Part shown: one piece after another, positions 914 through 7,800 of the stretch
Layout: every line of letters starts with the position of its first letter
How positions within the stretch are numbered: the first letter of the stretch is position 1
Source: Iphione sp. A-MEVVRFRX5
Lineage: Eukaryota
Direction of reading: 5' to 3'
Length of the DNA: 64,000 nt
NCBI GenBank assembly: GCA_976226885.1
Contig: OZ320316.1
Span: 76,942,001 to 77,006,000 of the forward strand
Notes under the pieces: model-generated
What the model was told of the DNA's origin: nothing
What the model saw: the letters and a program-made list of their open reading frames with translations, nothing else
Database searches by the model: none
Made by a program: the position numbers and the translations under genes

Positions 914-1212
914 TCACTTCCGGTCCTCAGACGTCTTCTTGCGGACCGAGGAACTCGGCTTGGGTATGCGCGACAGGCCTGACTTGCCCGGCGTGCCCAC
1001 CGGCACTGTGCGCACCTGCGTCTGGTGCGTCTGGTAGGTGACCGTGGTGTTCTGGCGGCCGCCGGCCGTGCGCGTCTCCGTCTTCACCGTGGTGAATATC
1101 TCCGGCTCGCCGCCCTCTGACACGTCCGAGCAGGCGCTGGGCGGCCGGCTGCTGCGGCTGCTCGCCCGACTGCTTGGACGGCTGCTCGTGCGGCTCGGCG
1201 TGCTCGCCCCGC
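914..1212 (-). CDS. MACF1: Terminal coding exon: GSR-like repeats and SxIP (SRIP at 962-973), stop TGA
   Basis: TTCTTCACCGCAG|GC, phase 1; [28 protein letters not shown]...SGLSRIPKP. Confidence 0.93.
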
Positions 1213-1866: not shown

Positions 1867-4800
1867 CCTATTGAGACAGCAGCTAGCAACTATTTTGACA
1901 TTAGAGTGGAATGTAGGTGTGCCGAGGGCACTTGTATATATATGTAGTATAAAAAGCATAAGGCACAGCATCCTTGCTGGCACCAAGCTAATCCCCTTGC
2001 ATCTTTCCTGATGACACGTCTTTCGGCTGCCCAGTGATACGTATGGTATCTTTGTTTAGCTGATGTAATTAGTTTTCAACTCCGCCTGATGTAAATATCG
2101 TTCATGAAAGATGCCTTACCCGGACTATGTATTCCACATCGTACTGGTGTACGAGGTCGTGCTCCGCTCGTGGACGGACTCATGATGTTGCGGACTTCCA
2201 TATCAGGACTGATCCGAGAACGAGGTACTTGTTTCCAAGGACTTCCGTACTGCGTCTTTTCACGTATCTGGAAGAGTTACAACCCACGGCGTTAGAACAT
2301 CATTGTTGTCTGCAACATGGGAGCTTAGCCATTTGGGGACTCTGTATAAACGATCACTCATAAGATAAATCCAAAATATTTCCAAAGCATGATTAAACAT
2401 TTCAAACTAAAAGACCAGCATTGAACAGAACCACCATGCCACAAAACTTAAGAGACACGAGCCAAAGTCTTAATCTAAATTTCGGATAAAAACGCGTTTG
2501 AAAGCACTGGGGAATTTGGAGTGTCTGTGCGGCTTTCAATTCAAGGCCGCTCTCCTATCCGTTGAGCATATTTACAAACTCGACAAGCAATTCTGGATTT
2601 CATCTACAGTGATAAATAGCTAATATTTACACTACTGACGACATGCATTTCTTGTGGACGAAAAAGTCCTAGATAAATTACACATATAAAAGGGATAACA
2701 CGGATATAATATAGCAAACCCACGAAAAGCATGTATCAACAACCTTAACATAGTTTCAAGAATACGCATACAGGTTGTATAGAGACAAAGAGCCAAACTA
2801 ACGACCACTGTTCGTCAATAAAAGCAGGTGTCATCTACCACCACGAGTCCTTACCTTTGGAGCATCTATCTTCCGTGGTATGCGTGACTGGACAGAGAGA
2901 GCACGCAGATTATAAAATACGTTCGTCTGATTCTTTTTTCAATCCCTGTTATCAAATGAGGCTTAAGGTCGATTTACGGATGGGGCTAAGGGGCTGGTAA
3001 AAAGTCTTCTATGGCGATGGTCAGTATATTCAGACTGAATTAAAGGGAAGAGGAATGGTTTGTTTCATACATTTACCCACAATTTTGAGCCTTCACAACA
3101 CTGAGGTACTTTGTAATGAAAATATCCAAAATGGAATGATGAACTTTTTTGGCTGAAGAAAGAATAAGAGTACAGGGTGACAAAAGAATACTTCCGCCTT
3201 TACTAATTTTAAAATAACTGTATTAAAAGTGGATAGGTGATCCCAAAATATTCACACGTTTATAGATAGCAGGGATGTCTCTCAGGATATGAACACATTT
3301 ATCACACTGCAATCTAGGCATAGGTAGGTATGTAAGCGGTCTCTCACCTTTGTGATGGGTCCACTGGCTGAGCTGGCCGAGCGGCCGCTCCAGCCAGACA
3401 CTGTGCTACTTTGGCTGCCGGTGGAGGTGCTAGGGCTACCCTTGGATGGCGTCTTGTGTACGAAGGGCGCCATCGACTGACTCACCCCCTCTGCCAGGAT
3501 AAACTGCTCTCGCAGCTCAATGTTCGTTCGCCCTTTGGCTGTAAAGCAATGAAGGCTTCCAGTGAGTACCATTTAAAATTCAATGGAAAAACTTCTTGGT
3601 TAGTAATTTTACAGGCCGTAGAAGCGTTAACTACCATCAAACACATGACCTACTCAGTGACTGCTATCTATGTTGAAGGATGCAAGTAAGGTGACAAACA
3701 GCTAGTTTGCATCTAAATCATATATTGGTGAATTCCTATGATTAATTCATCTGGACCTAAACATGCCCAAAAGACAATTCAAAACTTTGTTTATGACAAT
3801 GCATATATATACACGTGTAAAATGAAAAACAAAACAAAAATTAAGATTTGCCAGTAACTATTGTTTCCGCGCTTAAAAAGTCTTTTTAATCAACTCCTAA
3901 AGAACATGTTTATGATACGCATACCCTCGCACCTATGTTTCACCCAAATACCCGAAGAGGGAAGATCATTTTAAGCAGGATACTTAACATTTCATTTCTG
4001 AATAGCTTTCACCACATAAATAGTCTTAAGCAAGGAGAAGTCTTTGTAACAAAATATCATTTTCTATTAACAACAGACTGCAAAAAAGTCAAATAAGAGA
4101 CACATGTAATAGTAAATGAAAAGGAAACATAATATGACAACAAAATTACACTGAATCAACATAATAACATATAGAGCATCAAACTAAACAACTACAAGAG
4201 GCTGACTACGACAAAGGATCCATGCAAGAACACAATCTACCAAAGAATTATGTTGCGGTACTGTTCGTGATGTTTTGTGACACTAGGATTTCTGTAGGCT
4301 TAAAAAACTGACAGACAAAATGTCTCTCAGGATCCTTGTCTCCTGCCTAAATGGCAGACTGCAGAACGGTCACACGGCGAGATCTGGGAACGGAGGTGGT
4401 TCGGAGGCGGGGGGGGGAGGTTGTAGTGAAATCAGTACATGATGCACATATTTAAATCATTCAACGAACACGTAGGTAGGTAAGTGATGTTAGTTTTTTT
4501 TCCTTTCGTCACAGGGGAAACCAGCTATGATTTTGCATTCTAAGAATGAAGCTGTAGAAAAACCTACATCGGTGATGTGGGTAGTACCGCCTTTTGAAAA
4601 CAAAACGCTTCCGGCGCCACAGACCAACTTTCAGGAAGCGGACGGGCACCAGGAAGAGAAATAAAAGGAGGTAAATAAATAAATATGTTTGGTGTAGAGG
4701 TATGCCCAAAGATACCAGTTTTAGATGGTTCAGTACATCGCAATGGAGAGGGATTAGAATCGAGGAACCTTCCAAAAGCAGACGCTTGGGAAGGGGGATC

Positions 4801-7800
4801 GGTTTTCTTTGGAGGGGGGAGGGGTTGACATAGGATTTCCGCTATTCCCTCCGTAAGTTGTACTTACTGGTAAGGAGGAAATGCCTGTGTTCTGCTTCAA
4901 GAAATTCAAAAAGATCTATTTCTCAATAGACAACAGTTCTATCACGTCTACAATGACGTGCTGGATGACATGGCAGCTATACCTAAATTAACCATATGAA
5001 ATAAACACGAGTGTAAAACAAAGAATGATGTTTGGTACTCTTCCATTACTAAGGCTGCTTTAGTTGTAGACCTCGACCTTTAACCTGCCCGACCTTGAAT
5101 TCTCTTTTGTTTTTTTTCGGCGGTAAGAATTCCTTAATCTGCCGCAAAATCTAATGTGTTCACTCAGGAATTCTCTTTTTTGATGACTCATGCACAGCAA
5201 GGCACAACTTAAATAACGAAACATGCCGATGAACATAGGAATAAGGAAAATCTTTAAAAAAAATAAAAAAAATGTCAATTTCTCCATGGTGCTTAGGGTT
5301 CTTAAGGTGATCATCTGCAGCCACTGCAGGCGTTCATTCGAATCAGTGCTCTAAACATCCCAGCATAGGTAAAAAGGTCGTTAAGGCCAATGTTATCGTC
5401 TGAATCCAGGGCACAAGAAGCCGCTGGCAGTTTTGGGGAGGGAGATCAGCAGACCGGAAATGGAACAGCACGCGCGTGCAGATGGCTGGTCCTGGGACCA
5501 GACTCTCACCGGCTGCGGCAATTTGCGACGCGGAGTATTTGGACAACCTAGGTGCATGAACTGAGCATGGTGTTACATAGAAGGACGAGGCTCCGAGCTC
5601 GTTACCATAGTAGAACGACTTGCCCACGCCCTCTGCGTCAGCCGTCCCAGGGAGAGCACGTGGATAAGAGGGGGAAAAGGCAGGGAAGAATACATTTTTA
5701 CATGCTGCATATGGGTACGTCAACGCCAGAGGCCTGATAAAGTATAAGCTGTTGGGATTTATGTAGCATTTCAATTGGACCACGAGTACATCGAAGGTTG
5801 ATATTTTGGTTAACAGAATACCACAGAAGAATACTTCAAGAAGAGTATGTTAAATGAGACTGCAAAACTCATCATCTTAATATACTCTTTGTTGCAATGA
5901 AACATTGTAAAAGCTGATGTACATGTACCAACTATGTTAGCGCCATGGCATAAGCCACAGGGATCAAACATGAACAAGGCCCACTTTGAAAGGTAAGTTT
6001 CTTAAATTATATACACTGTACTTAACATCAAACCCATAAAACCGCTCTTAGTATCTGACACCTAAAAACATCTCGGAAGATATTCGCCATTTACAGCAAA
6101 AGGAAGATACATCTGTAAGGCAAGGTTAATAGTTAAGGTCATATGCCACAATAAATCAACAAACAGGGGTGCATTGCCTACCAATGAAAAAACTAAACAT
6201 TCCGGATGGAATCTGTTAAAAATATTACTTGGATACGATCAATTGTAGCCAATGACCATGGAAACGTGTTCTCATCTTGTAATATCAGATGGTCACATTA
6301 TGGCATCTTCCATTTATGGAATTCTGATAACATATACATGTATCTGATTTGATTTAGAGTATGGAATACAGAGTTTAAAGCATGTATTAGAATGCTTGAC
6401 ACTTTAATGCTCAGGGGCAGAGGGTCTCATATAGATTCACCAAGGGTCATGCAGTTGATCCCATCAAACCCATGCATTCATAATTTCTGAGCCAATGCAT
6501 ATGGTCACGTCGGCTATACATCGATTGAGGGAGTTCTGCATTCCTCTTAGCATTTCCGCCACCGCATCGCTTCCTTTTATGTATAAGTGAAGGAATGATG
6601 GATATCACTTAGGCAGAAGATGAAAAAGGTTATGGCTTACAAAATGCTATTTCCAGACGCTGTAACACTGATCAAACATACCACAAAGCCAAGAATATAT
6701 ATAAACAGTTGTTCTCAACATTCTTACTGATTTGTCCAATTAGTTATTAATGTATTTCAAAGTTGGTTCAAAAAGGGCCCGGAATCACACAAAACATCAG
6801 TTGACAGTGCACCCTTATGTGTTGCTAACTGCGACTTGGAATTACGATTATTGGATGTATTTTTACTTGGAAATTTAAACCAATATATGCATAGACTCAC
6901 CTCTACACGGATCGTTCTTGACGAGGAATTCGTCGAGGGCCACCCAACCTCCTCCTACTCGCACCATAACAGTACTTCTCAAGATGCGTACCAATCGTAG
7001 CTTCTGGGACTCGCCGAACTACACAGGAAAGGGATGCAATTTGAGATATTAAAAGTACACGTAGCTGTAATTTTCAGCCTTCGTCTGGATATGAAAGGCA
7101 GTAGGAATAAATATCTTATATATTGTAGTTAGGTATAGCTCTGTCTACCAATTAGGTCCACTAGCTCCCTATAGGTGACATAAGAGTGCTCCCTTCCTGT
7201 TTGGTTTCCTGTATTTTCTCTCATTTACTTCATGTTTTAAAGCTGGCTTTAGCACTAGCTGCTCCCTTTGCCTTATGCGTTTACTGGTAAGGGGCAGAAA
7301 CATACAGTGCAGTGGGAATATTAAAAGTAAAACATTTAATTAGAAGACATACTATCATAGACATTAGTATGGATACTTAAGCAATGTCAGTTTGGATAGA
7401 TAACCTAAAGATTACATTTCTCATTCATATTTATATACCTTCTGAGCCACGGATCTGTCTGCTCATCGTCAACAGTTAGTACTTACTCGGTATTTTCCTT
7501 CTCCTATCTTGTGAATGCGGAATTGTTTAACGCAAGTGCACTTTGCGCATGCTCTCTTGACCTCGTCGTGGATCTTAGCAGCATCGTCCATAGGTTTTGC
7601 CTTCTGTATGTTAGAAATATAATTATGCGTTAAAACACTTATGCTTCACTAAGTTTAAGCTAAAAAGAATTCAACTTAGTTATATTACTTAAGTACATGA
7701 ACATGCAGTACGAAAAATATTAACATTCAAGCCAACCGATAGCATCATCGGGGAATTATGTTAGGATCAATAGCCTTGAATAAAAGATCGCACTTGAGTT

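What the first reader, a model, noticed from the sequence alone, without database searches (positions are those of the whole stretch)
2855..2887. 33-nt microexon adding a second SxIP (EB1-binding) motif
Seen: strong acceptor with two TGC motifs 15-20 nt upstream, GTAAGG donor, phase 0-0, peptide [11 protein letters not shown]; another SRIP lies in the last exon (962-973). Known: SxIP in a basic context binds EB1 for plus-end tracking, and upstream UGC marks SRRM3/4 (eMIC)-regulated neural microexons. Inference: a splicing switch that doubles EB1 sites and tunes tip tracking, perhaps in neurons.
Basis: partly seen in the sequence, partly recalled or inferred. Interest (0 to 1): 0.72.

Follow-up and report, generated by a model that had tools for sequence, protein, structure and literature searches.

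The report
Conserved spliced microexon adding EB1-binding motif
A real 33-base optional exon near the end of a giant cytoskeleton-linker gene (a spectraplakin, probably from an annelid worm) adds a second copy of the short motif that docks such proteins onto growing microtubule tips, so splicing probably tunes how strongly the protein follows those tips.

Summary
Window 2855-2887 (minus strand) is a 33-nt, phase 0-0 exon encoding [11 protein letters not shown]. It has a pyrimidine-rich acceptor, a GTAAGG donor and two upstream TGC. It lies in the C-tail of a spectraplakin (MACF1/dystonin/Shot type), between the post-GAR exon and the IREKTQ exon.

It is not chance. Seven other genomic contigs carry a 27-36-nt, AG/GT-flanked, in-frame exon in the same intron. 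All begin x-x-I-P-R, five of them with S/T. In 1.01 Mb scanned, no such cassette occurs anywhere else.

Two spliced transcript contigs of one related species are near-identical (two mismatches in 2.7 kb) apart from a 33-nt insert. The insert encodes TRIPRRLDLDK at exactly this junction. So the orthologous exon is alternatively included.

Not tested here:
- No sequencing run was listed for this species, so tissue pattern and inclusion level are unknown.
- EB1 binding is inferred from the motif.

The neural/SRRM4 idea gets no support: the upstream TGC is not conserved.

Annotated arthropod spectraplakin isoforms also differ by SxIP-bearing cassettes. Splice-tuned SxIP number therefore looks general, yet I found no paper describing it.

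The scan had not noted this exon before.

The parts
2855..2887 (-). 33-nt cassette microexon, phase 0-0, encoding [11 protein letters not shown] (SxIP-type motif followed by basic residues)
   Evidence: Orthologous exons in L001, L003, L006, L007, L008, L011 and L036. Included in cDNA contig L089 and skipped in L094.
2888..2907 (-). 3' splice site: AG at 2889-2888, CT-rich tract, two TGC at 2907-2905 and 2903-2901
   Evidence: The TGC motifs are not conserved in the orthologues.
2849..2854 (-). 5' splice site GTAAGG, preceded by AAG
   Evidence: All orthologues have GTA at this position.
3348..3538 (-). Post-GAR exon (A)[17 protein letters not shown]...[11 protein letters not shown]. Its first codon is split with the preceding exon and it ends in phase 0, with donor GTGAGA.
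   Evidence: About 200 database relatives.
2120..2267 (-). Next coding exon [29 protein letters not shown]...; joined directly to GPITK in every spliced database protein
914..1212 (-). Last coding exon: SR-rich (GSR-type) repeats, then ...[24 protein letters not shown] and a stop at 916-914
962..973 (-). SRIP in the last coding exon, the canonical C-terminal EB-binding position of spectraplakins
   Evidence: An SxIP stands at the same place in the tails of relatives.
6901..7018 (-). Second half of the GAS2/GAR microtubule-binding domain; ends NDPCR plus one base
   Evidence: Pfam PF02187, E 1.6e-20.
7487..7600 (-). First half of the GAS2/GAR domain (approximate exon limits)
   Evidence: Pfam PF02187, E 6.5e-7.
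4568..4627 (-). A second, separate 60-nt cassette exon ([20 protein letters not shown], phase 1-1) between the GAR and post-GAR exons
   Evidence: The same insert is present in Haliotis RefSeq isoforms and in L004, L005, L008 and L010. It is skipped in L089/L094.

Best explanation
The window holds the 3' part of a spectraplakin gene (MACF1/dystonin/Shot family), probably of an annelid. Positions 2855-2887 (minus strand) are a conserved, frame-preserving cassette microexon.

When spliced in, it places SRIPRK... directly after the serine-rich ...[11 protein letters not shown], between the GAR microtubule-binding domain and the SR-repeat tail. The included isoform then carries two SxIP-type microtubule tip localisation signals about 140 residues apart. 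The skipped isoform carries only the C-terminal one.

Each SxIP can occupy one of the two EBH pockets of an EB1 dimer. The two-motif isoform should therefore bind EB proteins multivalently and shift from lattice binding towards plus-end tracking.

Shown here: the gene identity, the reality and conservation of the exon, and its alternative use in a relative.

Inferred: alternative use in this species, EB binding, and the effect on tip tracking. The regulator and the tissue are unknown.
For: Gene identity:
- Pfam finds Plectin, Spectrin, EF-hand and GAS2 domains on window exons.
- The tail is collinear with Haliotis MACF1-like protein and with cDNA L094.

The exon is real:
- Orthologous 27-36-nt exons, all multiples of three and AG/GT-flanked, lie in the same intron in seven other contigs:
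  - SRIPRRKDLKE (L001)
  - SRIPRGKKE (L003)
  - CLIPRRIQSAQ (L006)
  - YRIPRRLQKIQE (L007)
  - SGIPRKKLDLKE (L008)
  - SRIPRKKLDLKE (L036)
  - TRIPRRLVLEQE (L011)
- No such cassette occurs elsewhere in 1.01 Mb.
- Codons 1-5 vary synonymously while the peptide is kept.
- Between L008 and L036 the only alignable islands are the three flanking coding exons and this microexon.

Alternative use:
- L089 and L094 are spliced contigs of one species, 99.9-100% identical.
- They differ only by a 33-nt insert encoding TRIPRRLDLDK at the GPIMK|IREK junction.
- All spliced database proteins show the skipped junction.

EB reading:
- I-P is invariant and S/T is present in 7 of 9 versions, followed by R-[RK] and then hydrophobic residues.
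- This resembles the high-affinity CDK5RAP2 ligand KKSRLPRILIKRSR.
- Post-SxIP hydrophobic and basic residues raise EBH affinity, and plus-end recruitment needs multivalency (PMC12695022).
- Spectraplakin C-tails are established SxIP carriers (PMC4171495; bioRxiv 10.1101/122010).
Against: - No RNA data exist for this species: no run was listed. Inclusion, skipping and their ratio are extrapolated here from a relative.
- EB binding is untested.
- Two orthologues have C or Y in place of S/T.
- Acidic residues lie 4-7 positions after the proline in most versions and could weaken binding.
- No orthologue was found in a mollusc contig (L005) or in the spliced mollusc proteins retrieved. L004 holds only an out-of-frame relic. 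The exon is therefore dispensable in some lineages.
Confidence: 0.7

Rival explanations
1. The exon is real and conserved, but its selected function is not EB binding. The basic IPRR(K) block might add microtubule-lattice affinity, act as a nuclear localisation-like patch, or bind some other partner.
For: - The most conserved part is x-x-I-P-R-[RK], not S/T; two orthologues have C or Y at position 1.
- Net charge is +1 to +3 in all versions (peptides).
- Arginines in the C-tail are known to drive lattice binding (review 10.1101/122010).
Against: - I-P is the pocket-filling pair of SxIP ligands.
- NMR shows the serine makes few contacts in solution (PMC12695022).
- S/T is kept in 7 of 9 versions through synonymous change.
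- The host tail is a known EB ligand.
Confidence: 0.17
2. In this species the exon is constitutive and not a switch. Only the relative splices it alternatively.
For: - No transcript data for this genome.
- The splice sites look strong: CT-rich acceptor and AAG|GTAAGG donor.
Against: - Both forms exist in the relative.
- The skipped junction is the only one seen in all other spliced proteins and in cDNA contig L016.
- Short exons with strong sites are typical of regulated microexons (my own knowledge).
Confidence: 0.1
3. It is an SRRM3/4 (eMIC)-dependent, neuron-specific microexon.
For: - Two TGC at -20 and -16 in the window.
- Spectraplakins act in axons.
- The eMIC programme exists in bilaterians (my own knowledge).
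Against: - TGC within 25 nt upstream occurs in only 3 of 8 orthologues (window, L011, L007), roughly the chance rate. It is absent in L001, L003, L006, L008 and L036.
- 33 nt exceeds the usual 3-27-nt class.
- No tissue data.
Confidence: 0.15
4. It is a chance open frame between splice-like dinucleotides in an intron.
For: Stop-free 3n AG...GT cassettes are common, about 25 per kb over both strands.
Against: - Cassettes starting xxIPR[RKG] occur only at the eight orthologous places in 1.01 Mb.
- The exon is a conserved island between L008 and L036.
- It is present in a spliced transcript.
Confidence: 0.01

Closest known systems
Alternative C-tail exons alpha and beta of mouse Dst (BPAG1a/b) and Macf1 (Poliakova et al. 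2014, PMC4171495)
   Same: [quoted passage not shown] Beta lies between the third-last and second-last exons, as this exon does.
- All isoforms bind EB1/EB3 and bundle microtubules.
   Different: - The mammalian tails are reported to hold a single SxIP.
- The vertebrate cassettes seen here (TPHHLTRNYGKPWL..., GTPIQGSKLRLPGYL...) carry none.
- By eye, the vertebrate cassette resembles the window's [12 protein letters not shown] exon, not the microexon. Homology of the microexon to alpha or beta is therefore not supported.
Drosophila Shot C-tail with two SxIP tip-localisation signals (review bioRxiv 10.1101/122010; PNAS 2026 PMC12933142)
   Same: An invertebrate spectraplakin whose tail holds more than one EB-binding motif, needed for guiding axonal microtubules.
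   Different: The papers I read in full treat the motifs as fixed parts of the tail and do not describe splicing that changes their number. Here the second motif sits on its own optional 33-nt exon close to the GAR domain.
SxIP ligands of the EB1 EBH domain: MACF KPSKIPTPQRK and CDK5RAP2 KKSRLPRILIKRSR (PMC12695022)
   Same: S-x-[IL]-P core in a basic, disordered context, with arginine and hydrophobic residues after the proline as in CDK5RAP2.
   Different: Binding of this peptide is untested, and acidic residues follow within 4-7 positions.
SxIP-bearing cassettes in annotated arthropod spectraplakin isoforms (RefSeq models of Cardiocondyla obscurior, Daphnia magna, Bemisia tabaci, Contarinia nasturtii) and in metatranscriptome contig pairs
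   Same: Isoform pairs with otherwise identical tails differ by 17-40-residue inserts, each holding SSIP, SNIP or SRIP. This is the same principle of splice-set motif number.
   Different: The cassettes have unrelated sequences and sit at other positions, in the distal tail. They are computer-predicted isoforms, and I found no publication on them.
SRRM3/4 (eMIC)-dependent neural microexons (Irimia 2014; Torres-Mendez 2019; from my own knowledge)
   Same: A short, frame-preserving exon that inserts a few residues into a disordered interaction region of a cytoskeletal protein. The window has upstream UGC.
   Different: The UGC is not conserved. The length of 33 nt is above the typical class. Neural specificity is unknown.

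Membership tests
Spectraplakin (MACF1/dystonin/Shot) | Plakin (plectin) repeats, spectrin-repeat rod, paired EF-hands and a GAS2/GAR domain in one gene, in that order | tested here: met
   Pfam PF00681, PF00435, PF00036/PF13499 and PF02187 on window exons. The order follows from tblastn against Haliotis MACF1-like and L094. The giant exon is 6504 codons without a stop.
Spectraplakin (MACF1/dystonin/Shot) | Unstructured C-tail with Gly/Ser/Arg repeats and a terminal SxIP | tested here: met
   The last exon reads ...[20 protein letters not shown]... and ...[10 protein letters not shown]....
Spectraplakin (MACF1/dystonin/Shot) | N-terminal calponin-homology actin-binding domain | not tested
   It would lie beyond the window's upper end.
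SxIP microtubule tip localisation signal (EB1 EBH ligand) | [S/T]-x-[I/L]-P core | tested here: met
   SRIP in the window. Across nine versions I-P is invariant and S/T is present in seven; the other two have C and Y.
SxIP microtubule tip localisation signal (EB1 EBH ligand) | Lies in a disordered, Ser/Pro-rich, basic context with positive charges after the motif | tested here: met
   The context is ...[17 protein letters not shown].... The rule is taken from PMC12695022. An Asp at +4 after the proline is a possible weakening feature.
SxIP microtubule tip localisation signal (EB1 EBH ligand) | Binds the EBH domain and confers plus-end tracking | not testable with these tools
   Needs ITC or pull-down and live imaging.
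Alternatively spliced cassette microexon (51 nt or less) | Short, canonical AG/GT, frame-preserving | tested here: met
   33 nt, phase 0-0. Orthologues are 27, 33 or 36 nt.
Alternatively spliced cassette microexon (51 nt or less) | Both inclusion and skipping transcripts exist | tested here: inconclusive
   Met in a related species (L089 against L094). Not testable in this species because no run was listed.
eMIC / SRRM3/4-dependent neural microexon | UGC element just upstream of the 3' splice site, kept in orthologues | tested here: not met
   Present in the window at -20 and -16, but within 25 nt in only 3 of 8 orthologues.
eMIC / SRRM3/4-dependent neural microexon | Neural-specific inclusion dependent on SRRM3/4 | not testable with these tools
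   No expression data.
Vertebrate Dst/Macf1 exon alpha/beta | Sequence homology to the vertebrate cassettes | tested here: not met
   The vertebrate cassettes recovered share no similarity with the microexon. One of them resembles the neighbouring [12 protein letters not shown] exon, by eye only.

The most novel reading that the evidence does not exclude
Splice-set valency of EB-binding motifs may be a general and so far undescribed design of protostome spectraplakins. On this reading, individual SxIP motifs are housed on their own small cassette exons: this microexon in annelid-type genomes and unrelated cassettes in insects and crustaceans. Cells would then dial the number of EB1 docking sites, and with it the balance between lattice binding and tip tracking, by alternative splicing.
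Probability: 0.45. Interest if true: 0.68.

Novelty: new variant of a known kind. Interest (0 to 1): 0.55.

Why it matters
Spectraplakins guide growing microtubules along actin in axons, epithelia and muscle attachment sites. Their EB1-dependent tip tracking is central to that role.

So far this interaction is known to be controlled by phosphorylation. An exon that adds or removes a whole EB-docking motif would be a second, isoform-level control. It is conserved across several genomes and echoed by unrelated SxIP cassettes in arthropods.

It offers a simple natural pair of isoforms for testing how motif number sets plus-end recruitment. It also warns that C-tail constructs based on a single isoform may miss part of the regulation.

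Tried and rejected
- **Read evidence.** Two searches for sequencing runs (introns plus exons, then the last exon with its UTR) listed nothing. Read laying could therefore not be used.
- **Database proteins that include the exon.** None was found among 150 representatives, 120 full-length relatives of Haliotis MACF1-like, or 120 mid-size relatives of L089. All spliced proteins show the skipped junction.
- **Gigantopelta 12-residue insert (VCCCNHISHHRQ).** It sits at the same junction but starts with a GT-derived valine. It looks like donor read-through, not an orthologue.
- **Conserved UGC as support for eMIC.** Rejected.
- **Rbfox-type TGCATG near the exon.** Present within 300 nt in 4 of 8 orthologues, but on different sides. 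This is too weak to claim.
- **A further candidate SxIP cassette at 6563-6607 ([15 protein letters not shown]).** It is not conserved in any locus.
- **Naming the related contigs.** A search for assembly accessions in papers gave nothing.
- **Buey 2012 and Kumar & Wittmann 2012.** Neither is held in the library. The motif rules were taken from PMC12695022 instead.

Full report
**The observation**

On the minus strand, window 2887..2855 reads [11 protein letters not shown].
- It is preceded by ctgcgtgctctctctgtccag, with AG at 2889-2888 and TGC at 2907-2905 and 2903-2901.
- It is followed by GTAAGG at 2854-2849.
- The upstream exon ends in phase 0 with ...[11 protein letters not shown] at 3348.
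- The downstream exon starts in phase 0 with [12 protein letters not shown] at 2267.
- Both inclusion and skipping therefore keep the frame.
- The last coding exon (1212-914) holds SR-rich repeats and ...[10 protein letters not shown]..., with SRIP at 973-962.

**What gene this is**

- Pfam finds Plectin repeats in the giant exon, a Spectrin repeat, EF-hands and both halves of a GAS2/GAR domain on window exons.
- The exon order matches Haliotis MACF1-like protein and a spliced contig, L094.
- The best named relative of the giant exon is from the annelid Paralvinella palmiformis: 1483 bits, against about 710 for the next named protein.
- In a small tree of the tail, the window falls outside well-supported mollusc and arthropod clades.

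**Is the exon real?**

A search of 1.84 billion representative proteins with the post-GAR exon returned about 200 relatives, mostly genomic fragments. I fetched the contigs behind the closest ones and scanned metagenome contigs with an alignment of that exon.

In the intron that follows the post-GAR exon, seven other genomic contigs carry an AG/GT-flanked, stop-free exon of 27, 33 or 36 nt:

| Contig | Peptide |
|---|---|
| L001 | SRIPRRKDLKE |
| L003 | SRIPRGKKE |
| L006 | CLIPRRIQSAQ |
| L007 | YRIPRRLQKIQE |
| L008 | SGIPRKKLDLKE |
| L036 | SRIPRKKLDLKE |
| L011 | TRIPRRLVLEQE |

- The first five codons vary at synonymous sites (TCA/TCT/TCC, ATA/ATT/ATC, CCA/CCT/CCC/CCG, CGG/AGG/AGA/CGA/CGC) while the peptide is kept.
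- Between L008 and L036 the only alignable islands are the three neighbouring coding exons and this microexon; the microexon island is 57 nt at 79% identity.
- As background I scanned 1.01 Mb, both strands of the window and of all loci. Cassettes beginning [ST]xIP number 16, six of them at the orthologous site. Cassettes beginning xxIPR[RKG] number eight, all at the orthologous site.
- Using the pattern defined from the window alone, the joint expectation of finding it in the five further introns is about 4e-10.
- A mollusc-clade contig (L005) has no such exon. L004 has only a 31-nt out-of-frame relic.

**Is it alternative?**

- No sequencing run was listed for this genome, so there is no direct evidence in this species.
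- Two contigs from the metagenome collection, L089 and L094, are spliced: continuous frames of 450 and 642 residues run across the EF-hand, GAR and tail exons.
- They are 99.9-100% identical over 2.7 kb and differ only by 33 nt in L089. The insert encodes TRIPRRLDLDK exactly between ...SGPIMK and IREKTKY....
- That is transcript-level evidence for inclusion and skipping of the orthologous exon in one related organism.
- Every spliced database protein examined joins GPITK directly to [IV]RE[KR].

I therefore take alternative use in this species as likely but inferred.

**How it probably works**

- Spectraplakin C-tails bind EB1/EB3 through SxIP motifs set in basic, serine-rich sequence (PMC4171495; review 10.1101/122010).
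- In the EB1 EBH complex, Ile and Pro fill the pocket and the Ser makes few contacts in solution. Hydrophobic and basic residues after the motif raise affinity up to a hundredfold. Efficient plus-end recruitment needs multivalent contacts (PMC12695022).
- The microexon supplies an invariant I-P, usually S/T, then R-[RK] and hydrophobic residues. This resembles the 21-nM CDK5RAP2 ligand.
- Inclusion gives this tail two motifs about 140 residues apart, enough to engage both pockets of an EB dimer or two neighbouring dimers.
- The likely result is stronger tip tracking of the included isoform. This step is inference.
- The C/Y variants at position 1 and the acidic residues a few positions downstream are reasons for caution.

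**The neural/eMIC idea**

- A TGC within 25 nt upstream of the acceptor is present in the window, L011 and L007. It is absent in L001, L003, L006, L008 and L036. This is about what chance gives.
- TGCATG occurs within 300 nt in four of eight orthologues, but on different sides.
- Nothing here points to a particular regulator or tissue.

**Comparison with what is known**

- Mouse Dst and Macf1 have two alternative exons in the same part of the tail. The mammalian tails hold one SxIP, and the vertebrate cassettes recovered here carry none.
- Drosophila Shot is described with two SxIP sites, but not as splice-variable in the papers I could read.
- Searches for SxIP together with microexon found no paper. 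Broader searches found none on splice-regulated SxIP in spectraplakins.
- Annotated isoform pairs of Cardiocondyla, Daphnia magna, Bemisia and Contarinia differ by 17-40-residue inserts that each carry an SxIP. So do metatranscriptome contig pairs.
- In an unselected survey of near-identical tail pairs, 28 of 34 invertebrate indel segments carried such a motif. These segments are not independent, and some pairs are cross-species.
- The principle thus appears wider than this exon and is visible in databases, though not discussed in the literature I could search.

**Verdict**

This is a genuine, conserved cassette microexon in the spectraplakin C-tail that adds a second SxIP-type motif. Its orthologue is alternatively spliced in a relative. 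EB binding is plausible but untested, and the neural reading is unsupported. I class it as a new variant of a known kind and of moderate interest.

Noticed in passing
window 4568-4627 (minus strand): A second cassette exon of 60 nt, phase 1-1, encoding the very basic and aromatic [20 protein letters not shown] between the GAR exon and the post-GAR exon. Its inclusion changes the junction codon from Ala to Ser, exactly as in Haliotis RefSeq isoforms (DPCR-VGLWRRNRFRFMRRFLHHDQ-SKGRTN). It is also present in L004, L005, L008 and L010, and skipped in cDNAs L089/L094. Function unknown.
   Followed up: partly
Proteins P0201/P0202, P0165/P0166, P0185/P0186, P0266/P0271; loci L090/L091, L032/L034: Arthropod spectraplakin isoform pairs with otherwise identical tails differ by 17-40-residue inserts, each containing SSIP, SNIP or SRIP. 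In a survey of near-identical tail pairs, 28 of 34 invertebrate indel segments carried such a motif.
   Followed up: partly
window 2120-2267 (minus strand), against vertebrate dystonin proteins such as P0249 and P0286: By eye, the vertebrate alternative cassette TPHHLTRNYGKPWLTNSK... resembles the window's [13 protein letters not shown] exon, which looks constitutive in invertebrates. This suggests the vertebrate cassette descends from that exon.
   Followed up: no
window 6563-6607 (minus strand): A 45-nt phase 1-1 candidate cassette, [15 protein letters not shown], with an SxIP-like SIIP and a good acceptor. It is not conserved in any fetched locus, so it is probably chance.
   Followed up: yes
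window about 2647-2652 (minus strand, 208 nt downstream of the microexon); L007, L006, L036: TGCATG (an Rbfox-type element) lies 208 nt downstream of the microexon in the window and 198 nt downstream in L007, and 157-199 nt upstream in L006 and L036. That is four of eight against about 1.2 expected, which is weak, and the sides are inconsistent.
   Followed up: partly
L004 10298-10328; L015 about 764: Possible decayed copies of the microexon: LFVPRRVGLV in a 31-nt, out-of-frame AG...GT segment in L004, and CHIPR followed by a stop in L015. These suggest loss of the exon in some lineages.
   Followed up: partly
Proteins P0156, P0159, P0160 (Gigantopelta aegis): Annotated isoforms carry a 12-residue insert, VCCCNHISHHRQ, at the same GPITK|IREK junction. 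It begins with a valine from the donor GT, so it looks like an alternative donor or read-through rather than the microexon.
   Followed up: no
window about 1790-1870: A long (CT)n/(CTCTGT)n microsatellite in the last intron.
   Followed up: no
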